From the NCBI GenBank assembly GCA_026770705.1, contig JANJGN010000008.1, positions 18,662,001 through 18,726,000 of the forward strand: DNA of 64,000 nucleotides, written 5' to 3'. Made by a program: the position numbers and the translations under genes. Of this stretch, positions 2,776-59,784 are shown in pieces. This DNA comes from Isurus oxyrinchus (Eukaryota). Below the pieces are notes generated by a model. That model was not told the DNA's origin. It saw only the letters and a program-made list of their open reading frames with translations, and searched no databases. Each line of letters starts with the position of its first letter. Within the stretch, counting starts at the first letter, position 1.

Positions 2776-2894
2776 TTCATGCTGCCACTAACTCTGCCTC
2801 CTTCCACCTCTATAATGTTGCCCAACTTTGCTCAGATCTCAGCTCAACTGCTTCTGGAAGCTGCATTCATGCATTTGTTACTTTCAGACTCAAT

Positions 2895-11794: not shown

Positions 11795-11882
11795 ATGAGT
11801 CTACGAATTTTCTGCAGCAAATTGTCAGCTGGCTCGATGTTCAGTTTCTTTGTGTTTCTATTTCCGCCTGTTTTCACACAAA
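11795..11882 (+). CDS. Leader/signal-peptide exon (MSLRIFCSKLSAGSMFSFFVFLFPPVFTQ)
   Basis: ATG at 11795, hydrophobic core, phase-1 donor A|GTAAGT at 11883. An upstream acceptor (tatttctcacag, ending 11772) implies a further 5'UTR exon. Confidence 0.75.
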
Positions 11883-20800: not shown

Positions 20801-23800
20801 TGTTCCCGAGTGGTGAAAATTTCAGGAGCATTTGGAGCATTTGGTGGCCCTTTCATGCCTCTGCATTGCTTCACTGAGAAGAGAAGCTAGAGGCCTGACT
20901 CCAAGCATGTCAATGTGGCTGCATCTGAACTGTCTCAGCTGTGGAGGAACGGTCACTTCATACAATGTTTCCCTAATGTGTGGCCATCTCTCTCCACCTC
21001 TGCCCCGCTCCCTGCATGTACTTCTACACCACCATCAGACTGTGCTGCTTTCCCACCCTCCACCAACAGCAGCACAGCCCTTGCTCCAGAACCGCACAGT
21101 CAGCCAGTGGGGAAATAGCGAAATGCCTGTGCCCTCGCCTGAATGTGTGGCGCTTGTTTCTTCAAGTCAAGTGGGCGACCCTGGCGAGCGCTGTGTAACG
21201 TTAGTGCACACTCGCCCCCGAGTTCCTTTGGAAATTCAGCTCACCGGGTGCACCATCTTTTACATGTTGCCGTGAAACACGTCGGCGTATAATCTCACCG
21301 ACATTCCCAGATCATCCAGCACGGGGGGATGATTCTATTGGGCAGGGCTTATAATAATATGCAGATGTATGAAAATGACATTCCTGATGTGCGGCAGCAG
21401 GAAACGTGGTCACCCATTGACGGGTGGAGGGGACGTTCGCAAAGTTGGTTTCACAACGGAGTGGAAGTGAATTTTGGCCTTCTCACCATATTGTTCACTC
21501 ACGCCCACCATAGCGCCCGACACCAACGGGGATGGCAAATTCCAGCCAAAATATTAAGTATTTTTCTCTCTTCACAGATGCTGCCAGACCTGCTGAATAA
21601 TCCCAGCATTTTCTGTTTTAATTTCAAATTTTCATCATCTGCAGTATTCTGCTTTTATTATGAATTATTACAGACATTGAATTAAGAACTTGGATTAAGA
21701 ATTGAGGTTTACCATTAAAATAATTACATTTCCTCTTTCTAACAGGTAACACAAATCATATTTATTTTTTGGATGAGGGAGGTGATATCTCACTAAAAGG
21801 ACCAGACAATCCTGGAGATGGTCCTGTTGTCTGGAAATGGAAACCACACTCAGGGCAAGAAATCCAACAGCTGGTTACTTTTCGGAGAGACAGATCATGG
21901 AGGTGGAGTGCAAAATGGAGCAAACAATTTACAACCAGTGAGTTTTTCCAGAGGATAATAAAAGATCGGAATACCATTGATCTGAGAATTCGCAATCCCA
22001 TAATTCAATTTGCTGGATTGTTCACCTTGACTCAGACACAGCCAAGAAATGAAATCCTGAAACGTTATGAAATATTTGGGATCAAAGGTGAGTGGAACAA
22101 AATGTAGAAAAAAAACTATGATTTTCCATGAATAATATCAGGTGTAATGATTAGAAATTGCTGGGATCACATGGTTCAGGATTTTGAATTTTGGGTCAGG
22201 ACGCCGACGTTTGGGTCATATGGGGTTTACAATCCTGCCCCTGTTTGGGCACAGTCACCCAGCAGTGATTTTCCTTCAATTGGTCAATTAGAGGGCAGGC
22301 TGGCCTGATATTTGAGGATGGTGGCCAGACTTTCAAAGCTGAGGACCAATGGGAGGCTCAGATATAACAGCAGTCTGCAGCTCTGGTAAGAGAGAGCGGG
22401 TGCATTCATCTTGAGGTGTCCCTTCTCCAAACTTCCTAATCTATTAAATTAAAATTTTGTCACAGCAATCGGATCACAATTGTGGAAGTGGAACCCTCTA
22501 CAGTGTGGCCTATGGCTGCAGTTGTGGCCGTGCAAGTGGGGAGGACCTGAAAGCCAGTCTTGAGTATTTATCCCCCTGCTCAGACACCGGGTGGTAGCCA
22601 GCAGGTAGCTGGCCTTGTTCCCCCATGCATCAGGAGGCCCACAGACTGACTGGAAAATTTCAGTCTGAGTTTGCTGATTGTCCTTGATAGGCCTTTAACT
22701 CCTCCCACTTTGGGTAGTCTTCCTGACTCCCAAGCCGCCTCCAGGAAAATGGCCCAGGGATGGGATGGTTCCAGGAAACAGGGCTGGGGGTGGGGGTGTG
22801 GCATAAAAATTACCCCAGCAGCTTTATGTCAGCCAGTGCGATGCACATTCCTCATTATAATTATCGGGGGAAAGATTCTGTTCATTGTTTCTATTGAAAT
22901 GGTCAACATGAGTAAAAGAATATTGACAATTTAACCAGGAACAACAAACTGAGGAATCTACGCCATAGATACCATTATGGCCTATACATTGACAGACTCT
23001 CTGTAAGATGTACTGAATTCTGTTACCAAATAGCTCCCTTGTGCTAATAACTCTCATCATTGTGAGATAGAGGGCCAAATCTGAGAATCAAAGGGCAGAA
23101 TTTTGCCTGTCCCCAGGAGGCAGGAATGGTAGCTTTGTGCCCAGAATTTCAGACGGATCTGTGGCAGATTATCTCCCTGACCATGTTCTGCCATGGGGGA
23201 GTTTTACTGCCATGAGGGAGTTTTACTGATGATGGGACCAGAATCAGGCAGGTTGCGGGAACCCCATAGGAATATGTAAATACCCTATTAAACTCCATTT
23301 TACCAGGCCACCAGCATTCTGCCATCAGCGGATCAACTCCCTGCTGTGTGGAGAAACCACCAGCTAAGTGAAGACAGCTTCTCAGTGACAGCCTGGGGAG
23401 GAGGGGTTTTAGTATTAAAAAGGGGGTCACGGCCCAGTTGGCACTGCGGACCCTGCTGGGCTACCAGTCCTCTGACTGGGGGATTCATGCACATTGATCT
23501 TTGAAGTTGGTGGGACATATTGAGAGCAGTTCACAAAGCATATCCGACACTGGATTTCATTTATAAAGTTACTGCCGGAATTTACATTCCCCAGTGGTTC
23601 ATAACCTGGAGGTAACCCAGAAGATGTGCTCGGCAACCCGCTACCCGCTCCCCCGTCCCCCCTCTTCCCCCCCAACCACCTCCAGCTGTCCCCAGACAAG
23701 GACTACACAGGAGTTGCCCAGGAAGTTTAAGCTTCTATTGGATAACAACCCTGTACCTAGAACCATCCGAAACTTGATTTATATCGGAGAATTTGATTGG

Positions 23801-26800
23801 TTCCAAATATTTAAGCAGAATTAAAGCCAAGTCTAACTCCTGGTAAACATTGTACTGAACCCCCAAACATCCTACCTTCTGACTCCCCACCTCCCCTGCA
23901 ATTGTAAGATCACCCTCTCTGGTCTAGAAGTTCTTGTCTCTACTGTTGATATCAATGATACACAACAACTGGGGATACTGTTTCACTCAATGTGAAACAC
24001 CTTTATTAAATCTCTAAGCTATAATACACACTCACAATGATACTGGTTACTTAGGAATCCCATGTCCTCGGGTCCATCTCATGTGGCCAGTCCTTCAACA
24101 GATCTTGCAGGGTGACTTTGGAATGTCTGACTAGGCCTCTCTACCGACTGTAGTAACAAGGTCCTTGAGGGCTGTGTCTTTATATACCTTTCAGACCCTG
24201 GGCCTTGGCATATAAGTCAATTCCTTTAATCAGACTGTCCAATTGGATTATTAATCCCACCCTGGCCATCCATGACCACCCCTACATGGTCATATCCCAC
24301 TCTCAGCAGGTGCAGGGGGTCTCTCCATGCGAACAATGGGTGTAATCACTATAACCTGGGGCAGGAAGAAGGCCATTCACACTTTCTGATTGGGCATCGT
24401 CTAGTTCAGTTTCTGTAGGTGAAGTGTCTATGGCAAACCACCACCTCAGTGACCTGCCTTGATATGTCTGTGTCTGTTTAGTTGAAACTGTTTTTAATTT
24501 TAATGGTCAATATGAGCATCAGCGATGTCTCCGTCAGAATTCTCCCTCCGTAGCTCCACCTTCTCCCACCATGAAACAATCTCTGCCCACAGGTCTCCAC
24601 CATAACCAGTTTACATTCATTAATATGAAAGAAATGAAAGCGGTCACATGATTAAAAATGATTAATAAAATACAATTAAATGATTAATTGGCTTACACAA
24701 CTCCCTCTCAACATCTCGACCACCCCTCCTGAACAGCCCCTCTCAATCAGCCGAACCCCCGCCCACTGGGTGGTCCTACTGTAATGGTGTGGGCACGTTG
24801 AGTACAGGGTAGGACTGGTGCCTTCTCCGTGACAGATATTATGGGTAATACATTTCCAGCACATCCAGTGAGTTGCCAGCACCTGTTGATTTTGTTGGGC
24901 TTCCCTAAATACCATTCCAAACTATGTAAGCTTGGCTTGATGGGCCGAATAGCCTCTGTGTGTTACAATCCCCATGGAGACAAACAATGTGAAAGAATCG
25001 AACTTCCCAAATGATCTTAAATGCAAGAAAGCAATGGACAAGTTTTCACTTTTTAAAAACTTTGAGTGTAAAATAAAACCAAAATATATTAGTCATGAAT
25101 GAAGAGACAAGTTGTATTCATTAGCCATTTTAAATTGCACTTTAAATAGCCAATAAAACAAGGATAGATTGCAAAAATGTCCTGGCAGTTCCCCCCGAAT
25201 GTTTGGCACCATGTGCAGAATCCAAAGTCCCTCATAATTCTGGTTTCCTCAAGTAGGGTTTAACTCCTTTCCCTCATGCAGTGTTTAATCACGTAGCCTC
25301 TGACAACAGCCTTACTCCATCCCAGTTCTGAGTATACAGTTATCACCAAAAAGGCACATTTCAGCTCATGACAGTCCTGATGGCGTAAATTCCCCAGAGT
25401 CACCTTCACCCGGCCACTCCAACACTCCAGGAAATGATACAGCCAGCGCTGGTAAAACTTGTAACAATGGCAGTATCTTTCATTCACTACACTGGCTGCC
25501 AAAATCTAGACTTCAGTTTTTCTTTCTATTTTAGCTACAGTAATTCCTCACTAAATTTAGGTAGGAAACAATAATTCTTTGCCAAACCAAAATTGAGGGG
25601 AGTTCGTTCTGAGACAGCCTCACTTCTCCTCAGCAACTCAAGTTTGTGTAATCAGAACTCATGCTCCATTTGAAGCTTTTTGCTCTTGCTTCCTCTTTCC
25701 CTTCAAGTATGTCACCTCTTTCTGTATCTCTTTGATCATCTTTTTCCTCCCGTGCTGATTTCTCCCTCTCTCAGTCAATCTTTCTTAGTTCTATTCCTTT
25801 TTCAATTCTGGTCAGCTGTACTCAATCTTTAAAGGAAACAATCCTTCCTTGGGCCCCAAGTGCCTGAACAATTCTTCAAGGATCCTGCCCCTGTTAGCTC
25901 CTGATCTTATGTTCATTCTCATGTGCTCTGCTACAGCCTCGAAATGGTCTTTTCTCAAGTGTTTTCAGTCTCTGACAGTTAGACAAGGCTTGAACCTCAA
26001 TGGTGAATTTTCCAATAGAATATAGCAAAAGCAAATGTGAAGTCTTGTTTGTTTAAATGCTGGAAAGTTCCAGTGAATCCCTTTTACAGTCACTGGGTTT
26101 AATTACCGACTTGAGCCCAATTTTCTTACAATCCTGGTGGGGAACCAAAACAACCAAATGTGTCAAATGCCTTCTAAAGAAGAAACTACCAACAAGATTT
26201 CACTTTTTATAACTTTAACACAAATCAGAATCAACATGAATTAAACATGAATGTGTACCATAATAATCACTCTATGACTCCAGGAATGGTAATTGTGCTG
26301 GTGGATGGGGACCGTGAATTGTCATCCCCACTGTGTTGTTCTACTGGTAAGATGCACTTGTGTTTAATCTGGCCAGACCCTTTAATGCAGGAAGGTACAA
26401 GTGCTGATGATGAGCACATCCAAAGATCAGTTAGAACCTAATCACTGGATTGTAAATGCCACTAATTACAATAAATCTTATTGATCTGTCTTTCACAGCT
26501 GAAGCAAGTCCACAGTGGGCTCTGGTGGGCAGTGACATCACTCTCAGTTGTACCATCTCCAGACTCTCAGATACAGTCAGTCTTCACTGGAAACAGAGAG
26601 ACTCATCTCAGCAGAACAGGAGGAAAACTGATCAGATCCGACTAAATGACACAGCCTATCTGATGGTCAAACATGTTACAGTAGAGGATGGGAACTTGTA
26701 TGAGTGTGAAGTGAAGGAAAATGGATCCAATGTTATCACAGGAAATGCAGATATTTCTGTGTCCCAATGTAAGTGCAGTTTCCTCATAGGGGATATTCAG

Positions 26801-47800: not shown

Positions 47801-50800
47801 AAAAGATAAGCTAGATGGTATATTTGGTTAGAGGTGCATCATGGTCATAAATACATAACAGCGTCTTCCTGCTCTAATATGTATTTAGAGCAATTACTGG
47901 AGGAAGCATTATCAAGGACCATTAAGTCTTGTTCAATATTATGGTCAGGAAGATATGGTACAAATTTTTTGTCCTAATTGTCTCTAAGTTTTTGCCTCTT
48001 TCATCTCTGCCTACATGTTGTGGTGGATATTGAAACTGTAATAGTGTGAACAGTTGATAGTGAGTCACCAGCCCATTTTAAATTTTCTCCATTTTTATTT
48101 TGGTCCATTTCTTTCTGTCGCACAAAGTCAAAATCTACCCCATTGAATGCAGCTCTCATTCAAATAGTCATTATTCAAGTATAACCTTGTAAAGGAGCAT
48201 TATTCACCTATTGTACCGCATGAGGTTTCACAGCTGAATCAAATCCTGAGCTTACCAGTCATCTGCACAAAACTCAAAGCAATTGTTGGAATGCAACCAG
48301 GAAGTAGAACCCTGTGTGATTTATATTTTCTGTTCGATAACTGATGGGGACTGAAGACAGTTGTGACATTCCAAAATTCCTGAGTGAGGTCAGTTAACTT
48401 GTATCAGGGATTAAACCTACGATCTACTGGTTTGTATGGTTGGATACAAATCAGGCAGGAGGTTTGTCTACTGGGTCATGAGGGAAGCTTAATGTGTTTG
48501 TTCTGAGTTAAACTATAAACTAAATGCAAAATCTGTGCTTATTCTTCTCACAGATTCTTACACTTTTCAACTCACCAGTGTTGTTATTTTTGCGAGCCTG
48601 GCTTTTCTCCTTCTCATTATCCTGGCAGTGGTGCTGAGGATAAAGTGCAAAGCTGCAGGTAAGATATGAAAATTGTTGCAACCAATTTCAGCTTTCATAC
48701 ATTCAAGTGAATGTGAATGTGGCACATGTTTCAAGAAATTAAGAATTATAATTACACCTTGTTTATAATTTGTTATAACTAATTATAGCTGTACTTATAA
48801 TTATCATTTATAATAAGATGCAATTCACTCGGATTACTCGCAGCAAGTCCTGTCCTCCTATCATCCCTCTGCTTGCTGACCTACATTGGCTCCTGGTCAA
48901 ACAATGTGTTGATTTTAAACGATTCTCACCCTTGTTTTCAAATCACCATGGCCTTGCCCCTCCCTCTCTCTATAATCTCCCCCTTACACAAAACCATTGA
49001 GGTCTCTGTGCTCCTCCAATTCTGGCCTCTTGTGCATTCCCAATTCTAATTGCTTCACCATTTGTTGCCGTGCCTTCAGTTGTTCTGAACTCTGGAATCC
49101 CCTCCCTACATCTCACTGTCTCCCTATGTCCCTTTCCTCTTTTAAGACACTTCTTAAGACCGACCTCTTTGACCAAGCGTTTGGTCATCTGACTGATTGG
49201 ACAGAACTTAATGCTTTCCCCTGAGGTAGGTTTGATGGCAGTGGGGGGGCATTTAATAGGGCAGGAAGTGGACCCCACCATCTTCCTGCCTCTGCTACCC
49301 CCCCGCCCCACCCCCAAAGATTTTGTGGTACAAAAGCTCGAGAGCGGCCTTCCTACCCTGTTGACAATTGAGGTCCTTAAGTGGGCAATTAATGTTATTC
49401 ACCCAGCGGCAGGTGTGGGAAGATCAAAAACCAAACCCTTTAGGGGTTGCTTGGAGGTCTCCCGTTATTGGGTACTGAGTGCCTGCTCAAGGAATCTGCG
49501 GTATCGGGAAGTTGGGGACTCACTAAGAGCCAATTCCTGACCTTGCTGCCGAACATCCTCCACCGCAAACCCCACCCTACAACCCCCCCTACTCCCTCTG
49601 TGCCTGGGTCCTTGTGCAATCCTGGGCTTCGGGTGGGTGCATTACCAGCAGCAGCCACCCCTTCCACAGTGTCACTGCAGAGCAATGCAAAGCCTCCAGT
49701 CTCTAATTAACTGACAGGCAGGATTTCCACTCCAGGTCCTTGAACCAAGGGAAGGCCCAACCGCTGCACAGTTATTTCGCTGGGCCTTCCCAAAAGTAGG
49801 CAATGTGGGTCTCTCACCGGCTCACCAGCTAAAGGTTGAGATCCCTGTTGCGTATCATAAGAACTGCCCAATGTCTTCTTTTGTAGCTTGGTGTCATACT
49901 TTATTTTATAATGCTCCTGTGAAGCACCTTGGGGTATTTCATTAACATTCAAGGTGCTAAATTAATATAAGTTGTTGATGTGGGATTATATAAACAGATG
50001 TGTTTGTGTCTCTGTTCTTATTCATTCATGGGATGTTGGCATCACTGGCATTGCCCATCCCTAATGGCACTTAAGCTGATGGTGGTGAGCTGCCATCTTC
50101 AACCTTTGAAGCCCACTGGTGCAAATACGTGACTAGTGCTGTTAGCAAGGGAGGTGCAAGGTTTTGACCTGGCAACAGGGAAGAAATGGTTACATAGTTC
50201 CAAGTCAGGATGGTATGTGCCTTGGAAGAGAACTTGCAGGTGGTGGTGTTTCCATTCACTTGCTGCTGTCTTCTTTGGTACAGGTCCCAGGTTTAGTTAG
50301 GCACTGCCAAAGAAACTTTGGCCATTTGCTGCATTATAACTTGTACATGGTAGACTCTGTTGTCATGGTGCACCGATAGCAGAGGGAGTATATATTTAGG
50401 TGGTAGATGGGGCACCAACCGATGGGCTGCTTTGTCTTGGATGGTGTTGAGCTCTTGAATGTTGTCCGAGCTGAAATCATCCAGGCAAGTAGAGAGAATC
50501 CTATCACACTCCTGGCTTGTGCCTTGTAGATAGTGGACAGGTTAGGAGAGTCAGGAGATAAGTTACTCTCCACAGAATTTCCAGCCTCTGACCTGTTCTA
50601 GTAGCCACATTATTTTATATAGATGGTCCAACTAAGCTCCTGTACTGAGGCCTGTAGCTCAGTTTCTGATAGCCCTGTCAATAAAGCCTTCCATCACTTT
50701 GCTGATGATTGATTGTAAACTAATGGAGTGGTAATTTTCTGGATTAGGTTTGTACTGCTTCTTTGTGGCCAGAACTTACCTGGGCAATTTTCCACATTGT

Positions 50801-53800
50801 TGGTTAGATGCAGAGGGTATTGTAACTATACTGCAAAAGCTTGGCTTGGAGTGTGACTAGGCCTGGAGAACAAGGCTTCAGTACCACAGCATAATTATAT
50901 CAAGATCCATAATCTTTGTTGTATTCTGTGTGTTCAGTTATTGCTTGATATCACTTGGAGTGAATTGAATTAACCTCATCCTGTTGGGGGCATCAAGAGG
51001 AGGCCGAGATGGATTATCCACTTGGCACTTCTGGTTGAAGATGGTGGCAAATTCTTCAGCCTTATCTTTTTTTCACTGTTGTGCTTGACTTCCCCATCAT
51101 GAGGATGTTTGTTGAGCCTCCTCCTTCAGTTAATTGTCTGATTGTCAATCACCATTCATGTGGCAGAACTGGGGAGATTTGATCTGATCCATTGCTTATG
51201 ATAGAGCTTATCTCAGTATACTGCATGCTGTTTTCCACTCTTTGAAATGCACGCAGCCAACTTGATCAGTAGTGTTGTAGCTTCACTGGGTTGGCAACAC
51301 ATCCTTCGGAATGCCTGGTGCTGGTCCTGGCATGTTCTCCTGTAATCATCATTGAGCCATGGTTGGCCCCTGGTTTGATGGTAATGGGAGAGGCTGCCGG
51401 AACACGAGGCTACAGAATGTTTTTTTATTTGTTCTTGGGATGTGGGCCTCGCTGGCTAGGCCAGCATTTATAGCTTTCCTAATTGCCCTTATTCAGAGGG
51501 TACTTTTAAGAGCCAACAACATTTCTGCAGTTCTGGAAACACATGTCAGCCAGACCAGGTGAGGACAGTAAATTTCTTTCAGTGAACCAGGTGGGTTTTT
51601 ATGAGAAATAACAAGAGTTTCATGGTCATCATTAGACTTTTAACTCCAGGTATTTATTGAATTCCAACATCTGCTGTGGTGGGATTTGAATCTGGATTAC
51701 CAGAGCATTGCCCTGGTTCTCGGGATTACTAGTCCAGTAACAATACCACTACGCTACCACCTCCCTGTAGAATGTGATTGGATATAATTGTCCTGTGGGT
51801 GATGGCCCACAGTGACTCACAGATGCCCAGTTTCCGGCTGCTACATTTACTGAATATATTGCACTCATTGTAACACAATGGAGGGTATGTTCAATGTGAA
51901 GATGGGATTTCATCTTCACAGGGACTGCGTGCTGGTCACTCCTGCCAACATGGTCACGGACAGATGAATCTGCAACAGGTTTTTACGTCCTGTTGAGTCT
52001 CTCGCTCCCTGTCACAGACCGAGTCTGGCAGACATTTCCTTCAGGAATCAGCTAGTTTGATCAGCAGTGGAGCTTCCAAACCACTTTTGGTGACGGGCAT
52101 TGAAGTGCCCATCCAGAGTACAGTCCATGCTCTTGCCACCCATGGTGATTCTTACAAGTGGTGTTCAGTTGGGAGGTATACTGATTCATCAGTTGAATGA
52201 ATGTGGTAATTGGTAAAAGATTTCCTTGTCCATGTTTAACCTGATATAATGAAACTTCATGGGTCTGATGTCAACGCTGAGGCATCCAAGGCCACAACCT
52301 CCTGACTGAATGCCACTGTGCTGCCACCTCTGGTGGGTCTGTCCTTTTGGTGGTGGAAAAATCTGGATCATTTGCTGGAAGACATGATTGATTGAAAATG
52401 ACTATGTCAGGCTATTACTTGACAGGTCCTTGGTAGAGATCCCCAGATGCTAGTGAGGTGAAGTTTGCAGGGATAATTGGACACGAAATGCTTTTCGTTT
52501 CTGGTGCCTAGATCAATGCTGGGTGGCCTGACTGGTTTGATCTTTATTTGATTTTCCTGCAACTGTTTAATATAAATGAGTGGTTTGCTTGGCCATGGGA
52601 CAGGTGAGAGTCACCCACATTGCTGTGTGCCTGGAGACAAAGGCTAGGACTGAATAGGGACAGAAGATTTCCTCTCCTGAAAGACATTCATGAACATGTT
52701 GGGGTTTTACAACAATTGATAGTTCCATGATCACTATGACAGAATCTAGCCTTTTACTTCAGATTTGTTAATTAAATTTAAATTCCTCTTGCTGCCATGG
52801 CCAGATTCGAACGCAAGTTTCCAGACCATTAGCCTACACGTCTAGATTACTCACCCCACAATATCACCACTATGCTACCATTCTCATAGTGATTAGCCTA
52901 TAACTCCATTACTGCTGTAATCCATCACACTACATCCAGGATGGTAGAAGGTGAACTGGATGATCATTAGTAAACAATTTGGATTTTTTATCCAGTAGCT
53001 TCATAGTCATTCTTTTGGTGACAACTCCTTATATCCAGACTTAAGTCGCCAACTGTATTCAAATACTGAAACTGCCATGGTGGGATTTCAACTTGAATTT
53101 TATGGTTTCTGGGTTACAGTTTATGATGACAGTATTATGTCCTCAAGATGTCCTATAGTACTTTACAACCAATTAATTACTTTTGAAGTGTAGTTACTCT
53201 TGTTACCAAGGCAAATAGAGAGTTCATTGACTGAATGAAGATTCAGAACAGTAAATGTGCTGAATCATCAGAGAGTCAGTTTGTTGTTACTATGTTTGAT
53301 GGAGAAACCTTCTCTTGGACACTATAAGAAACCAGTGAGACATCCTAGTGAATGAGATGTGTCATAGTTTAATATCTTCTCCACCTCTGAAATTGCAGTA
53401 CCTGCTCAGAATAGCACTGACATGTTAGCCTGGATTATGTTCTCATGTCCTGGAGTGGGGCTTGTGTCAAGTCAAGTATCACCAGCTCTGGATCTGGTAT
53501 TTGCAGAGATATCTATTGTATCTTGTCACAATGTTTGTCATATCTGGTCTCGTGGTCCATTTTGAAACCGAGTTTATTGATTAGAATGTATGACATTTAA
53601 AAGGAAAGCTGACTGTGGGTTAATAGGTGACCTCTATATGAACAGGTTTGGAAAGTCAAAGACCAAAAGCTCTGCAGCCAGGAGAAAATACAGAAGATGC
53701 ATCTCAGCTTTATTCAAGTCTTCATGAAATTCAGCAAATGCAAGGTGACATTTAAACCCTTAAAGTAAGAATTTTACAAGTGCTGTGTTCTGTTTGTTCA

Positions 53801-56800
53801 TTACAGTTATATATCCCCATTTGTATTTTTCAATTACTCTTCAAAAACACAGCAATTTGCACTTTTATTCTGTTACACCCAAATATCATGTTGAATGCAA
53901 ATGTAATTAATTTTAACCATCCTAATCAGTTCCCAATTTTACTGATTGGTCTTCACTGCAGACTCTTGTAATCCAGGTTCTTTCTAAACCTTAGTTTGTA
54001 GGGCACTGTGTTATACAGACTACTCAAATATTCCAATTAATAGCTCTTCCGAAACAATAGCTGTATTTTGAGTCCTTAACCCTACCCCTTGATATGTGGC
54101 TGTACATTTCCTGAGATATCACCCGACAGCCATTAAAAGCCTCCAACACTTGCCACACTTAATCTAGTGTTTCTAAAACCACTTGTGACAACTAGCACCA
54201 GTGATATAGTACAGCATACAATCCTTTTTAGACAATATTGTTTTTTTCCTGGGGGGTCTGATTCCATTTTCCAGATGATTTCAGTATATCTCATTATTCA
54301 TGTAGCAGTTTTGTAGAAATGCCTGATACAACTTCTTTAAAAATCAAGTGATTGTCATGCCCTAATCAGAAAAATCTTATTTCCCAGGTGATAACAAGAC
54401 TGTGGTGCCTGAGACGAGTGGATTCGATGAACATGCAGTTGTCAGCATAAAGGCAGAAATCGACAGTAAGTAGCTGAATCATATAATGGCTCCATCTGTA
54501 TAGGTATTGTTAAAATAGAGACTGACAGATTTTATTTTGTTAAATTTTGCTTCTAGTTTAATACTTTGAGTGGGAAGCACTTCAGATCTGCAATGATAAA
54601 TACTGAGATATTTTAAGACTCTTTAATAATATAATACTGATCTGCTGCAGCGTTCAAGCACAATACAGAAACATATTTATTCAGCCATCCTGGTCATTGT
54701 ATATATCACAGGTTTACAATAGGAATGGCTGTTTGAAATTAAATATAATATAAAGCACAGAAAGAGACCATTCGGCCCAGCCAGGACATGTCGGCATGGT
54801 TGGTTAAAGCAGCAGTTAATGACCCACTGGGATATTTTAATTACCTACTCGATAGCTCCAAGGAGGGTGGAAAGCTAGTTCAGTGCTTGGACCGTTGCTG
54901 TTCACAATTTATATTAATAATTTAGATTTTACAAACACAACCAATTTCTAAATTTGTGGATTATACCAAATTAGTCAGGGGAGGGAGGGATATTCCATAC
55001 AGAGGAGGACTGCAGTAAAAGACAAGAAGACATTAATAAACTTAAAGAATGGGCATATAATTGACAAATAAGTTTCAACTTAATGAGAGGTTTTATATTT
55101 TGGTGAGAAAAATTAGGCTGAAAATTACTTGGAATGTAATGGGATAGAGGAGCAAAACCCTCTGTGTGAAGACTAGAAATGGGCTGGATGTTGTCAGGAT
55201 CCCAACTCAACATCACTTATTAGGATTTAACTCACATCCGCCTCTCCTTTCCCATTAAAATTCACCCCCCACCCACCTACCCCCCCTCCACCACCCCACC
55301 ACCCCCCCACCCCCACATGTATCTACTCTGTCTAAACCGATTACAATTTTAAAGAAATCTCCATCCCCCCATGCCGGACACCAGCCCACACCCCCAACCC
55401 ACACCAGCTGCACCTCAACCGTCTTATTTCAAGATGCCTGCTGCCTTCCTGCCAACCATTGAATTTTCACAAGTTATAAACCTCTTCCTTTGATCTAATG
55501 CTAACTTTAACGTCTTTGGTTAGCCAAAATTATACCACTTTTTTCTGTGTTGTTTTGTGTGTTAAAGTAGTACGTATTTGAAAATTATTTATTAATTCTT
55601 TAAATATGTTTGCCATCATATAGTTTGATGCTCTTTCCTAATCTACATTAGCCAACATGCTAATCATATCTATGTATTATTTTGCTCTTTAATATTTAAG
55701 ATGCTAGTTGTGGACTTAACTAAACCATTTTCAAGCTCAATATAAAATGTTATCATTCTAAGTTCACTTTAAAAGAAATTCACAACTTGTTTTGGGATGT
55801 GTTCATACACCACATATATAGATACAAATTCTATATTTCTGTCTTATTCTGTGCAGATACAGAGAAAGAAGATATCCATTATGGATCTATTGATTTTCAG
55901 AAAAAAGCAACAGGTAGTAAAACTTAACATTGCAATTTTTTCTCATATTTTCATTTTTGTGTTCTTCAAGGTGAGAAATGTTGCTGCTTATTTAGCCTGA
56001 ATTACCTTGAGGCACCTGATGTCAACATCAAGCAGTCCTAGGGTAAAGCTCCTCATACTCAGCCACGTCAAAGTGCTGAGTAGCTGTGGTTCAGTGGAGA
56101 GCAGTCTTTTCTCTGCGTCAGAGGGTTGTGGGTTCGAATACCACTCTAGAGACTTGAGCACAAAATCTAGGCTGACACATCAATGCAGTTCTGAGGCAGT
56201 GCTGTATTATTGAAAGTGCCGTATTTCATAAGAGATTTTAAACTGAAGCCCTGTATGCTCTCCCTGGTGGATATTTAAACAAAAAGCCATAGCACTAACT
56301 TATTGAATAAAGAGGTGATTTCCTGACTATCTTGGGCAGTGTTTATCACTCAACTAACACCACTGAGAAACAGATGATCTGGTCATTATCACAATGCTGC
56401 TTGTGGAAGTCTGTTGCACACAAATTGGCTGTAGTGTTTCCTGCATTACAACATGGAGTACACTTCAAAAGTAGCCCAATGCAGCAAGACCTGGACAATA
56501 TCGGGCTTGGGCTGAGAAGTTGCAAGTAACATTTGGACCACACAAATGCCAGGTAATAACCATCTCCAGCAAGAGAGAACCCAACCATCTTCCCTTGACA
56601 ATCAATGGCCTTACTATTGCTGAATCCCTTGCTATCAACATCAACATCAACATCCAGAAACTTAGCTGGACCTGTAATATGAATACTATGCTTACAAGAA
56701 CAGGTCAGAGGGTGGGAATTCCGTGGTGGGTAACTGTAGGGGGTGGTTGTGTGTGTCAGCTTCATCTCTGACTTCTGAGCGGTCCGAATCGCTCCCACTC

Positions 56801-59784
56801 CCTGGGTTCTCGACCTTGGACTTATTTGGGGGTTGTGACAAAGTGCAGCAGACAACTGGTTTTGGTGCAAGAAAAAAAAACTGGTTTTATTGAAGTCACA
56901 AATGAACTTATAACATTAGGATTACACCGAGTTTATACAGACCTACAAAGTACACTTAGTTAAGAATGGGGAACACACGGCATAACGAGGGAAAATCACA
57001 CTACTAATCCCCTTACCCTTGTCCCACCCCCAAAACCTAACTAATTTGAACTAGGAGAGGTCGGGGATCATGCTCACCAACCAGGGTTCCTTGACAGTTC
57101 GAAATCCAGCCAGGTAAGCCGGTTGCAGTTTTGGGGTACACTCTTTGTGTCCTCTGGGGCCTGCCATCCCCATGTAGTCCTGGTCTGTGCAATCTGCGAA
57201 AGTTCTTCAGTTGGGTGGAGGGCTCCAGTTGCAGCCTTGTTATCTTCACTTGAGCCTGCCACCCCATGCCCCTCACTGTGATGTTGCCTGCAAACCTCCA
57301 GATCTCTTTCCTCCTCTTGGCTTAGCTCCCTGCTTAAACTCTGCTCACCCTCCTGTGTCAGCTTTCAAAACTGCTCTTCCTTCTGTGTCTGCCTCCCCCT
57401 TCTCACTCCTGGCCCAGTTATATTGTTTTTTCAAATTTCTTATCTAAAACCGAATCAAGGTTAGTTCTTTGTCTGATTTTGGTGGGCTTCCCCAGATGAT
57501 TGTTGTCTCGTTGTTTTTAATGGGCTCTTATGATGTTTATCATTGTCTTCCTGCCCCCATAACTAGTCTTGAACTGAAAGCCATTGTATGTGTGGAGTAT
57601 TGATGGGTTCGCATAATTGCATTGATTGTTGCCTTCCTGCCTTAGTAGTTACTAACAATTATTTATGCAAGATTTTGATGGGCTTTAGTTTCGTGTCTTT
57701 CTCTGGGTTGATTTTTTTAAAGGGAAGGATGTGTATTCTGTCTCCTCTCATTGTCTGGTTTCAGGTAAAAGTCCAAAAGTCATATCCTTGTTGATGATAT
57801 GAAAAATGTGGGAATTTTGAGAACCCTTCAGTAACTCACTTCCTGATTCCCTAAAACCTGCTCACAATCGACAAGGCACTTGTCAGAAGTGTGATGGAGT
57901 ACTCTCCATTTGCCTGGCTGAGTGCAGCTCCAACAACACTCAAGAATCTTGATGCCATCCAGGACAAAGCAGCCCACTTGATTGGCACCCCATCCACCTC
58001 AGTAAACATTCACTCCCTCCACAACCGACACACATTGGCAGCACTGTGTACTATCTACAAGATGCACTGAAGCAACTCACCAAGGCTCCTTTGACAGCAG
58101 CTTCCAAACCCACAACCTCTTGCAGTGGTTGAAGAAAGCTGTTCACCACCATCTCCTCAAAGGTAATTAGGGATAGGCAAAAATGCTGGCCAATCCAGCG
58201 ATGCCCATATCGGTGCAAAAGAATAAATTTAAAAAAAAAACATTCAAGTGCCTCAACAGCTAAGTAGAGTATAGTGGTGACTGAGGTGCTGGGCTGCCAG
58301 CCTGAAAGTCATGACTTCCAATCTGATCATGTTATGTTGAGAAATTGAATTGACTAAATCTCCCCATTTGTAGGCCAGCACCAGAGAACTTGTGGTAATG
58401 TCCCTCAGAGAAAGGCGCCTACTTTGTGGCTTCAGTGAGATGCTAACCTAAACCATGTGGTTAACCTTTAGCCCTCTCTGAGGTATATACTTGCTTCAAT
58501 ATAGAATTCTTAAAGCGGGTGGGGATGAGCAATAAATGTGGCTCTGGCCAGGGTTAGCAACTACCTGAGAACAAATACATTGAACATAGGGACCACATTA
58601 CCTCCTTCACTGACAATGAAGCATGCTAACTATTAGCATTGCTGCTAATTTTATTCATAGCATTGATAATGCCTTTCCATTTGGAAATATTTCCAGAAAG
58701 AAGCTTTTTAATAGGCAAGAATTTTTTTGTAACCATTTTTGAACAAACTATTGAAGTTGTTGACAATGTGGAACCAGAGTCAAAGGAAAATATTTGACAT
58801 TCTTGAATAATATCATGTCAAATATTGAACATGTGGATATAGAAGGAAACTTGTTTCAGCCCTCTGTGTACCAGCTTGTCTCAGGGTCAGCACACTTGTG
58901 TCTGAGAAGCAAGGTCACAGTTTTGAGCCTTGCTACTTGCAGTCTTGGTTGAGAGGATGCTCATTGTTGGTGCGCTGCCGAGCACGGTGAGTAAACTCGA
59001 ACAGTATGCAAGAGGCTTTCACATGTCCTGAAAATGAGAAAGACACTGAAAACTTCTCCCAAATTGATCTAACTAAAGCTAATTTTTATATGGGTATGTA
59101 GCTAACACCTGTTCCCTGGGCATTAATGATAGGAAATGGAGTGGTGATCATTGACACTTGACTTCCAATCCTTTTATCATGCCCATATTGCTTCAGTGGA
59201 AATAAGACTGATGGAGCATTTCCCACTATCTCAGGCTCCATTTTCTTCCAAAAACCCATCCAAAGGGCACCGAGTTCCAACAGCAGCTGAATGAGCCAGC
59301 AATGGGTCATGCAATCTCCCAGCAATGATGGACTGAGCGTTGTGATGTTCCCTGTAGCACATTCTGTAAAAGGCACTTAGTGTGCATGTGAGTAAAACAG
59401 ATCAAACCTGGCTATTGGCTGTATGAGTGAATGCCGTAAATCGAGGATGTTTGTATGCCAATTGTCATTTTTTTCAGCTTGATCTGTCAATATTATTTGT
59501 TAATTGTGATGATTTTGAATATCACAGGGAGCAGCCAGGGAGAAGGGAATACACAGTGTAACACACAATCTTCAGATACTGTAAGTACATTGATTCCTAG
59601 TCATGAAATTGTACCCTAAAATATAAATATCTACAACATTTGTAAAATTATTGATGAGAAGAGATGCAATAATTGATCACATTATTATAAATGGTTAATT
59701 TCTGTCTTGCAGGAACTGGCTCCTTCAGAGGAAGATGTTTCATCTGTCATCTATGCACAAGTAGCACAAGCAGGATATAAATAA
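11795..59784 (+). CDS. Whole gene model (15 coding exons): 8-Ig-domain, CD4/LAG-3-like type I transmembrane receptor with ITIMs, 999 aa
   Basis: Exons 11795-11882, 21746-22087, 26499-26768, 28677-29015, 29094-29363, 37635-37979, 40883-41155, 43545-43883, 43962-44231, 48554-48658, 53646-53744, 54388-54465, 55857-55913, 59528-59580, 59713-59784. All introns are GT-AG with matching phases. The exons join into an open 3000-nt frame from ATG to TAA. Confidence 0.85.
14030..15298 (-). mobile_element. Young 5'-truncated Penelope element with GIY-YIG endonuclease end and inverted pLTR
   Basis: ORF 14523-14852 reads NLVYCIRCSQCGLLYIGETKRKLGDRFAEH…GLNIEF. 14030-14168 is inverted at ~15125-15265. 13-bp TSD TATTTAAAAGCCA (14017-14029 and 15299-15311). 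Confidence 0.92.
15161..15201 (+). ncRNA. Minimal hammerhead-ribozyme-like motif in Penelope pLTR (mirror copy on - strand at ~14091-14132)
   Basis: agtt-CTGTCGA-a-gggtc-atgag-gactc-GAAA-c-GTC-aact gives stem I agtt/aact, stem II gggtc/gactc, the GAAA core and a GUC cleavage triplet. The core is a CUGUCGA variant of CUGANGA. Confidence 0.6.
16460..17390 (-). mobile_element. Tx1/L1-clade LINE RT fragment
   Basis: MPLPWRRAVIVLLPKKRDLCHLRNWRPVPLLSTDYKIVAR…GRTIFDNI…SLDQEKAFDRV. Confidence 0.85.
17805..18203. repeat. Minisatellite of ~26/30-bp units (cagcagcaggaacagccacaggaaa[tccca])
   Basis: About 14 tandem units visible directly. Confidence 0.95.
21746..22087 (+). CDS. Ig domain D1, V-like, no cysteines
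   Basis: Acceptor ttcctctttctaacag, donor G|GTGAGT, 342 nt, phase 1-1. Translation ...DEGGDISLKGPDNPGDGPVVWKWKP...DLRIRNPIIQFAGLFTLTQ...YEIFGIK follows the V-set strand pattern with both canonical Cys replaced. Confidence 0.9.
23903..24697 (-). mobile_element. Solo LTR (~795 bp)
   Basis: Termini TGTAAG…CTTACA, flanks CAAT/CAAC (4-bp TSD with one mismatch), TTTATT at ~24002 (poly(A) signal on -). Splits a repeat that also occurs inverted at ~42520-42960. Confidence 0.7.
26499..26768 (+). CDS. Ig domain D2, C2-like
   Basis: Acceptor tctttcacag, donor T|GTAAGT, 270 nt. GSDITLSC...LHW...EDGNLYEC. Confidence 0.92.
28677..29015 (+). CDS. Ig domain D3, V-type
   Basis: Acceptor ctctattacag, donor G|GTAGGA, 339 nt. 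ELYLIC...AAWIW...NFSMRIVPVLFEDAGVYKC. Confidence 0.92.
29094..29363 (+). CDS. Ig domain D4, C2-like with WxC motif
   Basis: Follows a 78-nt intron, 270 nt, donor G|GTAAGT. VTEGDTVILTCSVS...LVW...GKWIC. Confidence 0.92.
29880..31745 (+). mobile_element. LINE family 'A' (CR1/L2 group), RT region and 3' tail with poly(A)
   Basis: LDIKAAFDRVWHQG, GVPQ.SVLG, MFADD, INILGVTID motifs. A-tail at ~31739. Confidence 0.85.
31746..33510 (-). mobile_element. LINE family 'A' fragment, inverted relative to the adjacent copy
   Basis: ALDTKAAFDQLWQQG and GPDSIQAIVLKTCAPE. Reverse-complement homology to ~29900-30810. Confidence 0.8.
33975..34460 (-). mobile_element. CR1 LINE RT fragment
   Basis: IPQDSVLGPLLF, KFADDTKI, WQMEFNPEKCEVMHFG. 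Confidence 0.88.
34470..34800 (-). mobile_element. Deu-domain-like SINE remnant
   Basis: Reverse-complement similarity to the tRNA-headed SINE at 56080-56470. Confidence 0.55.
35220..35490 (-). mobile_element. Gypsy pol (RT/RNase H) fragment
   Basis: GLRPVGDQVRATREAPTPKN…GRFLPNLSAVLAPLYSLLKKNHRCTW. Confidence 0.8.
37635..37979 (+). CDS. Ig domain D5 (paralog of D1), V-like, no cysteines
   Basis: Acceptor ccctttccttgcag, donor G|GTAAGT, 345 nt. LKGPDNPGNGSIVWEW...LRIRNPMFNLAGMFTWSQ...YEVFGIK. Confidence 0.9.
39180..40260. mobile_element. L2 LINE remnant (-) interrupted by a CR1 3' fragment (+, ~39570-40100)
   Basis: L2-like TAHFHFYIVAQL…LIHAFVISGL on -. CR1 C-terminus and 3'UTR (…ggccgaatgagctactcctgctcctaattc) on +. 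Confidence 0.7.
40883..41155 (+). CDS. Ig domain D6 (paralog of D2), C2-like, F-strand Cys replaced by Trp
   Basis: Acceptor ctgtttttacag, donor G|GTAAGT, 273 nt. GSDVTLSC...LHW...NLYTW. Confidence 0.9.
41885..42230 (+). mobile_element. tRNA-derived SINE sharing its 3' tail with LINE family 'A'
   Basis: Pol III boxes (tggcatagtgg, gggtttgactc) and conserved body (gaaggaaatctgctgtccttacctggtctggcctacatgtgac). Other copies at 60555-60935 (+), 51420-51765 (-), 52560-52880 (-) and ~40500-40680 (-). Confidence 0.75.
43545..43883 (+). CDS. Ig domain D7 (paralog of D3), V-type
   Basis: Acceptor ctctctgttacag, donor G|GTAGGA, 339 nt. ELDLIC...KWTW...FSVRIVPVLFDDAGVYTC. Confidence 0.92.
43962..44231 (+). 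CDS. Ig domain D8 (paralog of D4), C2-like with WxC motif
   Basis: Follows a 78-nt intron, 270 nt, donor A|GTAAGT. VTEGDTVTLTCSVS...RNWTC. Confidence 0.92.
44515..45030 (+). mobile_element. CR1 LINE 3' end
   Basis: RTREHNLRVKG…MRRNFFSQRVVNLWNSLPQRAVEA, followed by a CR1-type 3'UTR. Confidence 0.88.
45463..46550 (+). mobile_element. LINE family 'A' 3' part
   Basis: GVPQGSVLGSTIFSCFINDLP, WADKW, and the shared tail gggcaattagggatgggaaataaatgctggcc. Confidence 0.85.
48554..48658 (+). CDS. Transmembrane exon (NSYTFQLTSVVIFASLAFLLLIILAVVLRIKCKAA)
   Basis: Acceptor ttcttctcacag, donor G|GTAAGA, 105 nt. Uncharged hydrophobic stretch followed by basic stop-transfer residues RIKCK. Confidence 0.9.
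48830..49195 (+). mobile_element. L2 LINE 3' fragment
   Basis: PIIPLLADLHWLLVKQ, RAFSCSELWNPLP, SFKTLLKTDLFDQAF. Confidence 0.75.
50020..52450 (-). mobile_element. Old LINE family 'A' copy with nested SINE
   Basis: Reverse-complement homology to 29900-31700. SINE inserted at ~51420-51765. Confidence 0.7.
53646..53744 (+). CDS. Cytoplasmic exon 1 (GLESQRPKALQPGENTEDASQLYSSLHEIQQMQ), contains YxxL
   Basis: AG acceptor at 53644-45 (weak pyrimidine tract), donor G|GTGACA, 99 nt, open, phase 1-1. Confidence 0.7.
54388..54465 (+). CDS. Cytoplasmic exon 2 (GDNKTVVPETSGFDEHAVVSIKAEID)
   Basis: Acceptor tcttatttcccag, donor A|GTAAGT, 78 nt, phase 1-1. Confidence 0.75.
55857..55913 (+). CDS. Cytoplasmic exon 3 (NTEKEDIHYGSIDFQKKAT), ITIM IHYGSI
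   Basis: Acceptor ttctgtcttattctgtgcag, donor G|GTAGTA, 57 nt. ITIM consensus I/V/L/SxYxxI/V/L at 55874-55891. Confidence 0.85.
56080..56470 (+). mobile_element. tRNA-headed Deu-domain-like SINE
   Basis: A box tggttcagtgg, B box gggttcgaatacc, body acttgagcacaaaatctaggctgacac. Inverted copies at ~34470-34800 and ~53140-53470. Confidence 0.65.
56478..58240 (+). mobile_element. LINE family 'A' 3' part, split by a solo LTR
   Basis: 56478-56734 and 57831-58240 are contiguous when compared with the copy at ~45740-46530. Confidence 0.8.
56735..57830 (-). mobile_element. Solo LTR (~1.1 kb) with perfect 5-bp TSD
   Basis: Termini TGTAGGGGGT…AACCCTTCA. TSD GTAAC at 56730-56734 and 57831-57835. TTTATT at ~56886. 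Confidence 0.8.
59528..59580 (+). CDS. Cytoplasmic exon 4 (GSSQGEGNTQCNTQSSDT)
   Basis: Acceptor atcacag, donor |GTAAGT. Phase 1 in and phase 0 out, which the last exon requires. Confidence 0.75.
59713..59784 (+). CDS. Last coding exon (ELAPSEEDVSSVIYAQVAQAGYK*), ITIM VIYAQV
   Basis: Acceptor tttctgtcttgcag, phase 0, TAA at 59782-59784. ITIM at 59746-59763. Confidence 0.85.
   Translation, partial: ELAPSEEDVSSVIYAQVAQAGYK

What the first reader, a model, noticed from the sequence alone, without database searches (positions are those of the whole stretch)
11795..59784. Intact 8-Ig CD4/LAG-3-like receptor with a double-ITIM tail: candidate undescribed inhibitory immune receptor of cartilaginous fish
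Seen in the sequence: 15 GT-AG exons join in frame to give SP-(V-C2-V-C2)x2-TM-126 aa tail, 999 aa, with no stops despite ~45 kb of TE-filled introns. Established: V-C2-V-C2 with a WxC F-strand in the C2 domains (here GKWIC and NWTC) characterises the CD4/LAG-3 family. CD4 signals through a CxC/CxH Lck-binding motif, and ITIMs recruit SHP-1/SHP-2/SHIP. Inference: this is not CD4 (no Lck motif) and not a standard four-domain LAG-3. It is a doubled CD4-like ectodomain joined to a classical ITIM tail, so it may be a lineage-specific inhibitory receptor with roughly twice the reach of CD4.
Basis: partly seen in the sequence, partly recalled or inferred. Interest (0 to 1): 0.92.

Follow-up and report, generated by a model that had tools for sequence, protein, structure and literature searches.

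The report
Shark eight-Ig CD4-like inhibitory receptor
This is a real, intact shark gene for a cell-surface receptor with eight antibody-like domains and an inhibitory tail; it belongs to a large, unstudied family of paired "brake and accelerator" receptors whose outer part most resembles CD4 and LAG-3.

Summary
Fifteen AG/GT exons (11795-59784, + strand) join in frame to give 999 codons plus a stop: signal peptide, eight Ig domains, a transmembrane helix and a 126-aa tail with two canonical ITIMs (IHYGSI, VIYAQV). Contigs from RNA-like runs cover the three exons laid but not the unique intron DNA. They also carry the D8-to-TM splice at the predicted bases.

The gene is not a one-off. Great white shark LOC121281409 has the same architecture and an almost identical tail. 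Eight-Ig ITIM forms occur in at least ten shark and ray genera. The family also includes charged-TM (Lys), short-tailed members, which are the activating type, and forms with no TM. All carry the label "uncharacterized protein", and I found no paper on them.

The four-domain unit is closest to CD4 and LAG-3 by profile search and by fold (VIA Z about 17.8). It lacks the CD4 Cx(C/H) motif, the LAG-3 (F/Y)xxL(D/E) motif and WxC in D2, so it is neither gene.

Domain trees show the doubling predates the shark/ray split. The outer unit evolves faster than the membrane-proximal unit.

Inhibitory signalling and the ligand are inferred, not shown. I did not search with the joined protein; searches were exon by exon.

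The parts
11795..11882 (+). Exon 1: ATG and signal peptide (29 codons + 1 base)
   Evidence: GT donor. 83-86% identical to the N-termini of Cetorhinus and Carcharodon proteins. No second copy in the window.
21746..22087 (+). Exon 2: D1, a Cys-free, Trp-rich V-type Ig domain (outer unit A)
   Evidence: No Pfam hit. AlphaFold model has pLDDT 93 and a V-set fold; best matches are 2B4, P0, CD58 and CD48. Atlas features are V-set.
26499..26768 (+). Exon 3: D2, an Ig domain with the canonical Cys pair and YxC (LYECEV)
   Evidence: (ig, Ig_3, C1-set, I-set hits).
28677..29015 (+). Exon 4: D3, a V-type Ig domain
   Evidence: The family-profile D3 aligns with CD4 D1.
29094..29363 (+). Exon 5: D4, a C2-type Ig domain with WxC (GKWIC)
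   Evidence: WxC aligns in register with LAG-3 D2 and D4.
37635..37979 (+). Exon 6: D5, a paralogue of D1 (inner unit B)
   Evidence: 50% aa identity to D1.. 96% identical to Carcharodon P0177 residues 464-577.
40883..41155 (+). Exon 7: D6, a paralogue of D2 with the second Cys replaced by Trp (LYTWEV)
   Evidence: The same YTWEV is seen in catshark P0001 and manta P0004.
43545..43883 (+). Exon 8: D7, a paralogue of D3
   Evidence: Covered by contigs of runs X1-X3.
43962..44231 (+). Exon 9: D8, a paralogue of D4 with WxC (NWTC)
   Evidence: Contigs cover it and join 44231 to 48554 (record 13).
48554..48658 (+). Exon 10: stalk, uncharged transmembrane helix (VVIFASLAFLLLIILAVVL) and RIKCKAA
   Evidence: Spliced to D8 in contigs of X1, X2 and X3. 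Only copy in the window.
53646..53744 (+). Exon 11 (T1): tail segment with LYSS, where most relatives have LYSN (YxN)
   Evidence: tblastn of orthologue tails. Boundaries. Motif comparison.
54388..54465 (+). Exon 12 (T2): tail segment FDEHAVV, where relatives have FDEY
55857..55913 (+). Exon 13 (T3): first ITIM, EDIHYGSIDF
   Evidence: The motif is conserved in 25 of 30 ITIM-tailed relatives.
59528..59580 (+). Exon 14 (T4): tail spacer that ends in phase 0
59713..59784 (+). Exon 15 (T5): second ITIM SVIYAQV, C-terminus AGYK and the TAA stop
   Evidence: Identical to the C-terminus of Carcharodon P0177.

Best explanation
The locus is an intact, transcribed gene of a lamniform shark. It encodes a type I membrane receptor whose ectodomain is a tandem doubling of a four-domain, CD4/LAG-3-like unit (V, Ig, V, C2 with WxC). 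The helix that follows has no charged residue, and the 126-aa tail carries two consensus ITIMs 42 residues apart.

It is the long, inhibitory form of an old elasmobranch multigene family. That family also contains four-Ig ITIM forms, forms with a Lys in the TM helix and a short tail (the activating type, expected to pair with a DAP12- or FcR-gamma-like adaptor), and forms with no TM.

Proposed mechanism (inferred):
1. The fast-evolving outer unit (D1-D4, the type also carried by the four-Ig forms) binds a ligand on another cell or a pathogen.
2. The conserved inner unit (D5-D8) acts as a stalk.
3. On engagement, Src-family kinases phosphorylate the two ITIM tyrosines.
4. The phosphorylated ITIMs recruit SHP-1, SHP-2 or SHIP and dampen activation, opposing the charged-TM relatives.

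Shown here: gene structure, splicing of D8 to TM, architecture, family composition, fold and sequence affinity to CD4/LAG-3, and the age of the doubling. Inferred: signalling, adaptor pairing, ligand and expressing cell type.
For: - Gene model: 15 AG/GT exons in frame, 999 aa. There is no second signal-peptide or TM exon between D4 and D5.
- Expression: contigs of X1-X3 lie on D7, D8 and TM but not on unique intron sequence. One contig joins 44231 directly to 48554. Some contigs match the window with 0 differences.
- Orthologues: Carcharodon XP_041050287.1 (P0177) is colinear D1-D8 with a near-identical TM and tail. Eight-Ig forms appear in many shark and ray genera.
- Family composition: 78 ITIM-tailed, 37 charged-TM short-tailed (consensus GYLFVKL) and 42 without TM among the retrieved relatives.
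- Tail: ITIM1 is conserved in 25 of 30 and ITIM2 in 22 of 30 relatives, at a spacing of 39-42 residues.
- CD4/LAG-3 affinity: sequence profile; fold; D3-D4 on rat CD4 D3-D4 at rmsd 2.5 A over 169 of 177 residues; Atlas: g6f-like and CD4 clusters among the nearest named.
- Age and rates: inner-unit and outer-unit domains of sharks and rays separate with SH-aLRT 97-99. The four-Ig forms carry the outer type of D1. Outer D1-D3 have longer branches.
Against: - No read or contig was laid across D4->D5 or TM->T1, because the introns (8.3 and 5.0 kb) do not fit the 6-kb limit. A single 8-Ig-plus-ITIM transcript from this locus is therefore not shown directly.
- The run type is recorded only as 'RNA?', and all three runs come from one sample.
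- One contig retains the 78-nt D7-D8 intron, which carries a stop.
- All Ig exons are phase 1-1, so exon-skipped isoforms are possible. RefSeq lists such isoforms for a great white paralogue.
- This copy has lost two family-conserved tail features (YSN->YSS, FDEY->FDEH).
- dN/dS between the two units is 0.63-1.04 for D2-D4, which could reflect relaxed constraint as well as diversifying selection.
- No activating partner lies inside this window.
- SHP binding, adaptor pairing and the ligand are untested.
Confidence: 0.75

Rival explanations
1. The gene mainly produces four- to seven-Ig isoforms by skipping phase-1 Ig exons (for example unit A only or unit B only). On this reading the 8-Ig protein is a minor product or an artefact of gene modelling.
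For: All Ig exons are symmetric phase 1-1. RefSeq isoforms of great white LOC121281175 lack single domains, with architectures 1234134 and 2341234. The D4->D5 junction was not observed for this locus.
Against: Eight-Ig models are the commonest long form in more than ten genera. Inner and outer units have been kept as distinct, orthologous sets since before the shark/ray split, which argues that both are used together. There is no separate signal-peptide or TM exon for a second gene.
Confidence: 0.12
2. It is an ITIM-bearing adhesion molecule in the manner of PECAM-1, CD22 or CEACAM1. It would act in homophilic or heterophilic cell adhesion on blood or endothelial cells, rather than as a ligand-diversified paired immune receptor.
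For: It has a long multi-Ig ectodomain with two ITIMs, as PECAM-1 and CD22 do. CEA and NCAM are among the top profile hits. The tail pattern xIxYxxIxF ... SxIYxQV resembles that of CEACAM1 and the CD33-type Siglecs; this comparison is from my own knowledge, not tested. The inner unit is conserved.
Against: Charged-TM short-tailed relatives with the same outer unit, many tandem paralogues per genome and a fast-evolving outer D1 are hallmarks of paired immune receptors. CD4 and LAG-3, not adhesion molecules, top the fold searches.
Confidence: 0.08
3. This particular copy is a decaying or non-functional paralogue in a birth-and-death gene cluster.
For: Two conserved tail motifs are lost (YxN, and FDEY->FDEH). 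dN/dS reaches 1.04 between D3 and D7. An intron-retaining contig exists.
Against: There are 999 open codons across 15 exons, and every splice site is intact. Both ITIMs are intact. YSS is shared with the great white orthologue and so is not a private defect. Spliced contigs identical to the window exist. The D6 Cys->Trp change is an ancient conserved feature, not decay.
Confidence: 0.05

Closest known systems
CD4 and LAG-3 (V-C2-V-C2 MHC class II co-receptor family; shark genes described in PMC10768021)
   Same: The four-domain unit has the same fold order. Four-domain CD4 and LAG-3 are the best structural matches. D3-D4 superposes on CD4 two-domain rods at 2.5-3.7 A. Both V-C2 halves of LAG-3 align to D3-D4 with WxC in register.
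   Different: - The unit is doubled to eight domains.
- WxC is present only in D4 and D8, not in D2 or D6.
- D1 is Cys-free and gets no Pfam hit.
- The tail has no Cx(C/H) and no (F/Y)xxL(D/E); instead it has two canonical ITIMs.
- It is a multigene family with charged-TM partners.
- Sharks already have separate CD4 and LAG-3 genes.
Teleost G6F-like (four-Ig thrombocyte collagen receptor with YxN plus ITAM; PMC3528668)
   Same: It has four Ig-like domains of the CD4/LAG-3 type. A membrane-proximal YxN motif is conserved in most family tails (23 of 30). Two 'g6f-like' clusters rank 2nd and 3rd among named clusters in the Atlas feature search, at the same score (0.97) as the first, a contactin-2 cluster.
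   Different: The tail carries two ITIMs instead of an ITAM, and this gene has lost the YxN. It is a multigene paired family with an eight-domain form. No alignment with a G6F-like sequence could be made here.
Paired inhibitory/activating IgSF receptor families (KIR, LILR, SIRP, CEACAM, teleost NITR/LITR)
   Same: The logic is the same: related ectodomains joined either to ITIM tails or to a TM helix with a basic residue and a short tail. There are many tandem paralogues, and the membrane-distal domains evolve fast.
   Different: The domain types differ (a CD4-like V-C2 unit rather than LRC C2 or single V domains), the family expands modularly by four-Ig blocks (8, 12 and about 16 Ig), and it occurs in cartilaginous fish.
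CD2/SLAM family (Cys-free V plus C2; Ly9 is V-C2-V-C2)
   Same: D1 alone is closest in fold to 2B4, CD58 and CD48. The D1-D2 region matches NTB-A (VIA-align Z 13.5).
   Different: There is no ITSM (TxYxxV/I). D3-D4 and the whole unit match CD4/LAG-3 better.

Membership tests
CD4 | Four-domain V-C2-V-C2 ectodomain with rod-like two-domain halves | tested here: met
   Model of the four-Ig relative P0006: CD4 scores Z 15.8-17.8 over 316-329 residues. D3-D4 superposes on rat CD4 D3-D4 at rmsd 2.5 A. In the window gene the unit occurs twice.
CD4 | WxC in the F strand of both D2 and D4 | tested here: not met
   D4 has KWIC and D8 has NWTC. D2 has YECEV and D6 has YTWEV.
CD4 | Cx(C/H) LCK-binding motif in the cytoplasmic tail | tested here: not met
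   The tail translated exon by exon has only isolated Cys residues (KCKAA, QCNT).
CD4 | Conserved genomic neighbourhood next to LAG-3 | not testable with these tools
LAG-3 | (F/Y)xxL(D/E) ITIM-like motif in the tail (PMC10768021) | tested here: not met
   The only YxxL is LYSSLH, which is followed by His. Relatives have LYSN(V/I).
LAG-3 | Sequence similarity of the V-C2 units with WxC in register | tested here: met
   Family profile against PDB: LAG-3 has E 2e-12, and both halves align (i-E 9e-5 and 3e-4). This shows relatedness, not orthology.
G6F-like | Four Ig-like domains, a YxN motif and then an ITAM split over two exons | tested here: not met
   Four-Ig unit: yes. YxN: present in 23 of 30 relatives but YSS in this gene. 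There is no ITAM; two ITIMs lie 42 residues apart.
G6F-like | Direct sequence or phylogenetic grouping with G6F-like | not testable with these tools
   No G6F-like sequence could be retrieved (one search found none named). There is only an Atlas feature lead.
Paired ITIM / charged-TM immunoreceptor family (functional class) | At least one consensus ITIM (S/I/V/L)xYxx(I/V/L) in the tail of a TM protein whose helix has no charged residue | tested here: met
   IHYGSI and VIYAQV; TM helix VVIFASLAFLLLIILAVVL.
Paired ITIM / charged-TM immunoreceptor family (functional class) | Close relatives with the same ectodomain type but a basic residue in the TM helix and a short tail | tested here: met
   37 relatives, most with the GYLFVKL consensus, in sharks and rays. 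Their D1 is of the outer-unit type. None is shown in this window.
Paired ITIM / charged-TM immunoreceptor family (functional class) | Phosphotyrosine-dependent recruitment of SHP-1, SHP-2 or SHIP; adaptor pairing of the charged-TM forms | not testable with these tools
   This needs biochemistry.
CD2/SLAM | ITSM TxYxx(V/I) tail motifs | tested here: not met
   No Thr lies at position -2 of any tail tyrosine. Only D1 resembles the family, and only in fold.

The most novel reading that the evidence does not exclude
The family is a separate, ancient branch of the CD4/LAG-3/G6F-like lineage that cartilaginous fish expanded into germline-encoded paired receptors. Its CD4-like outer unit would recognise MHC class II or another polymorphic self ligand. 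That would make it a shark counterpart of KIR/LILR built on the CD4 scaffold, with reach adjustable by adding four-Ig blocks (4, 8, 12 or about 16 domains).
Probability: 0.12. Interest if true: 0.9.

Novelty: new variant of a known kind. Interest (0 to 1): 0.62.

Why it matters
CD4 and LAG-3 are treated as a two-member family (plus G6F/G6F-like) with fixed four-domain ectodomains. This locus shows that the same scaffold was doubled before sharks and rays diverged. It was then multiplied into a large family with opposing ITIM and charged-TM signalling forms, and the family has unnamed relatives in coelacanth, bichir, sturgeon and some teleosts.

That gives comparative immunologists a concrete, testable candidate for an early innate paired-receptor system built on the co-receptor fold. 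It also provides named loci (for example great white LOC121281409) for expression and ligand studies. The finding bears on how the CD4/LAG-3/G6F group arose in the proposed Ur-MHC region.

Tried and rejected
- **Joined protein.** Every search used single exons by reference, or database proteins returned by the tools. Scripts computed only phases, junction codons and per-exon translations.
- **Pfam on the eight Ig exons.** It gave only generic Ig families and nothing for D1 or D5. There was no hit to the CD4-specific models I expected from memory (C2-set PF05790, CD4-extracel, Tcell_CD4_C).
- **D4 alone against PDB.** The result was uninformative; LAG-3 had E about 0.3.
- **Two tandem genes?** I looked for a second signal-peptide or TM exon between D4 and D5 and found none.
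- **Names for distant relatives.** All are 'uncharacterized', 'hypothetical', 'obscurin-like', 'CEACAM5-like', 'VCAM1-like' or 'CD276 homolog', that is, automatic names.
- **Reaching G6F-like.** A profile search seeded with bony-fish relatives returned only sturgeon, paddlefish and bichir relatives plus CD22-like noise.
- **Literature.** Searches for CD4/LAG-3 in sharks, G6F-like, obscurin-like nurse shark, and paired receptors in cartilaginous fish found no description of this family. Subscription journals are not covered.
- **Read laying.** It could not span D4->D5 or TM->T1 within 6 kb, so I laid D7-D8-TM instead.
- **Upstream inverted match.** The match at 2079-2894 to the D5-D6 intron is partly a dispersed repeat, so I do not count it as evidence of a neighbouring paralogue.

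Full report
**Observation**

One search checked them arithmetically, computing only exon lengths, phases and junction codons.

- There are 15 exons, and every internal boundary is AG...GT.
- Entry phase is 1 for every exon except the last, which is phase 0.
- No exon and no junction codon contains a stop.
- The total is 3000 nt, which is 999 aa plus TAA.
- The order is: signal peptide (11795-11882); D1-D8 (21746-22087, 26499-26768, 28677-29015, 29094-29363, 37635-37979, 40883-41155, 43545-43883, 43962-44231); TM (48554-48658); and five small tail exons (53646-53744, 54388-54465, 55857-55913, 59528-59580, 59713-59784).
- The tail exons were located by tblastn with the tails of database relatives.
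- The tail is 126 aa and holds IHYGSI and VIYAQV, both consensus ITIMs, 42 residues apart.
- The introns carry reverse-transcriptase and GIY-YIG fragments.

The step of searching with the joined protein was left out.

**One gene or two?**

D5-D8 are paralogues of D1-D4, at 50, 61, 54 and 67% aa identity and 71-84% nt identity. This divergence rules out an assembly duplicate. The signal-peptide and TM exons each occur once in the window, so the two blocks share one start and one anchor.

**Expression**

No run is on record as RNA, but X1-X3 (one sample, organism A, about 100 M letters of contigs each) behave like RNA.

- Contigs lie on D7, D8 and the TM exon and on dispersed repeats, not on the unique intron stretches 44233-44404, 45093-45436 or 46985-48532.
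- One 387-nt contig aligns 43973-44231 and then continues directly at 48554-48660. Two other runs show the same joint.
- Several contigs match the window without any difference.
- One contig retains the 78-nt D7-D8 intron.

**Relatives**

A profile of D4+D8 searched against 1.84 billion representative proteins found 58 proteins at E <= 1e-10. Follow-up searches and name look-ups show a large chondrichthyan family.

- The closest proteins are from great white and basking shark, at 85-97% identity per Ig exon, so the window is from a lamniform shark.
- Great white XP_041050287.1 (LOC121281409, 1025 aa) is colinear D1-D8. Its TM and tail are almost letter for letter those of the window model.
- I classified the retrieved relatives by domain order, TM helix and tail. 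There were 78 with ITIM tails, 37 with a charged TM helix and a short tail (most with a Lys, consensus GYLFVKL), and 42 without a TM.
- The architecture 1234-1234 with an ITIM tail occurs in Carcharodon, Heterodontus, Pristiophorus, Rhincodon, Chiloscyllium, Hemiscyllium, Stegostoma and Heptranchias. It also occurs in the rays Mobula, Hemitrygon, Amblyraja, Pristis and Hypanus.
- A 12-Ig form (Heptranchias) and a form of about 16 Ig domains (Scyliorhinus canicula) exist.
- The tail is strongly conserved: ITIM1 (E/D)(D/N)I(H/Q)Y(G/A)xIxF in 25 of 30, ITIM2 S(V/I)IYAQ(I/V) in 22 of 30, spacing 39-42 residues, and a proximal LY(S/A)N in 23 of 30.
- The window gene and its great white orthologue have YSS in place of YSN. 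The window gene alone has FDEH for FDEY.
- More distant relatives with the same D1 motif (VWEWxPHxG) and four-domain order occur in coelacanth, bichir, sturgeon, tarpon, eel and cyprinids.
- Every name is automatic: 'uncharacterized', 'hypothetical', 'obscurin-like' and similar.

**Age of the doubling**

Trees of each domain type from 22 eight-Ig proteins, 11 four-Ig proteins and the window were built.

- They put all inner-unit D5, D6 and D7 domains of sharks and rays on one side of a well-supported branch (SH-aLRT 97-99). D8 is less clear.
- The doubling therefore predates the shark/ray divergence.
- The D1 of most four-Ig forms tested (9 of 11), both ITIM-tailed and Lys-TM, falls with the outer-unit type; the two divergent four-Ig rows (Callorhinchus P0280, Heterodontus P0037) fall with the inner-unit set.
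- Terminal branches are about twice as long for outer D2 and D3 as for inner D6 and D7, and visibly longer for D1 than for D5.
- Within the window, dN/dS between the units is 0.36, 0.78, 1.04 and 0.63 for the four domain pairs.
- This fits a variable ligand-binding outer unit on a conserved inner stalk. That reading is an inference.

**What family?**

- *Pfam.* It gives only generic Ig models, and nothing for D1 or D5.
- *Sequence profile.* Profiles of the four-domain unit searched against PDB sequences put LAG-3 at ranks 2-4 and CD4 at rank 8 of about 4700 Ig hits. Both V-C2 halves of LAG-3 align to D3-D4 with WxC in register, and D3 aligns to CD4 D1.
- *Fold.* An AlphaFold model of the four-Ig relative P0006 (pLDDT 82.5) finds LAG-3 and four-domain CD4 as Foldseek ranks 1-4. 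VIA-align gives CD4 Z 15.8-17.8 over all four domains, against 14.2 or less for any other entry. D3-D4 fits rat CD4 D3-D4 at 2.5 A over 169 of 177 residues.
- *D1 alone.* The window's D1 (pLDDT 93) is a Cys-free V domain, closest to 2B4, P0, CD58 and CD48.
- *Atlas.* Language-model features place P0006 next to 'g6f-like' and CD4 clusters. This is a lead only.
- *Defining motifs that fail.* There is no Cx(C/H), no (F/Y)xxL(D/E), and no WxC in D2 or D6. [quoted passage not shown]

The gene is therefore CD4/LAG-3-like in scaffold but is neither gene. A closer tie to teleost G6F-like (four Ig domains, YxN, ITAM; PMC3528668) is plausible but could not be tested.

**Mechanism**

The combination points to a paired-receptor system of the KIR/LILR/SIRP kind. 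The supporting features are two conserved ITIMs at fixed spacing, a TM helix without charge, sister genes with a Lys in the TM helix and short tails, many paralogues per genome, and a fast-evolving distal unit. The window gene would be a long inhibitory member. Phosphatase recruitment, adaptor pairing, the ligand and the expressing cell type are all inferred.

**Novelty**

I found no paper on this family (subscription journals are not searchable here). Public annotation lists the genes without a function. An earlier first-reader note of this scan reports a similar tandem family 250 kb downstream in the same genome, which I did not check.

I rate the finding a new variant of a known kind.

Noticed in passing
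window 29016-29093 and 43884-43961: The 78-nt D3-D4 and D7-D8 introns are 74/78 identical, while the flanking exons have dS of about 0.33. One contig from an RNA-like run retains the D7-D8 intron, which carries a stop (X1 record 3). Possible causes are a gene-conversion tract or a constrained, regulated intron.
   Followed up: partly
window 40883-41155 (D6): The second canonical Cys is replaced by Trp (LYTWEV). The same YTWEV is in the inner unit of catshark P0001 and manta P0004. It is therefore an old feature of the inner unit, not decay.
   Followed up: partly
window 53646-53744 and 54388-54465: The family-conserved LYSN (YxN, a Grb2-type motif) reads LYSS here and in the great white orthologue. 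The conserved FDEY reads FDEH in the window only.
   Followed up: partly
window 2079-2894 vs 39449-40447: An inverted copy of part of the D5-D6 intron lies upstream, at 81-84% identity. Part of it also matches 44605-44911 at 70%, so at least some of it is a dispersed repeat rather than a trace of a neighbouring paralogue.
   Followed up: partly
window 44405-46640: Repeat elements in the D8-TM intron, including a reverse-transcriptase fragment at 45444-45785, are covered at very high depth by contigs of all four runs, with many internal joints. This suggests an abundantly transcribed or multi-copy retroelement family.
   Followed up: no
window 17622-18401: A long low-complexity stretch in intron 1 is open on both strands and encodes QQQEQPQE-type repeats. 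It is probably a tandem repeat, not a gene.
   Followed up: no
window 14523-14852 (-), 16944-17366 (-), 33976-34416 (-), 62707-63291 (+): These are GIY-YIG and reverse-transcriptase ORF fragments from Penelope-like and LINE-type elements, lying in the introns and in the 3' flank.
   Followed up: partly
relatives P0151 (Heptranchias, 1404 aa) and P0001 (Scyliorhinus canicula, 1710 aa): Family members have three and about four copies of the four-Ig unit on the same ITIM tail. The ectodomain length therefore varies in four-domain steps. They could also be fused gene models.
   Followed up: no
family D2 domain (window 26499-26768): D2 scores against Pfam C1-set (E 3e-6), and the family-profile D2 aligns with antibody light-chain constant domains. 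This is unusual for a CD4-like position-2 domain.
   Followed up: no
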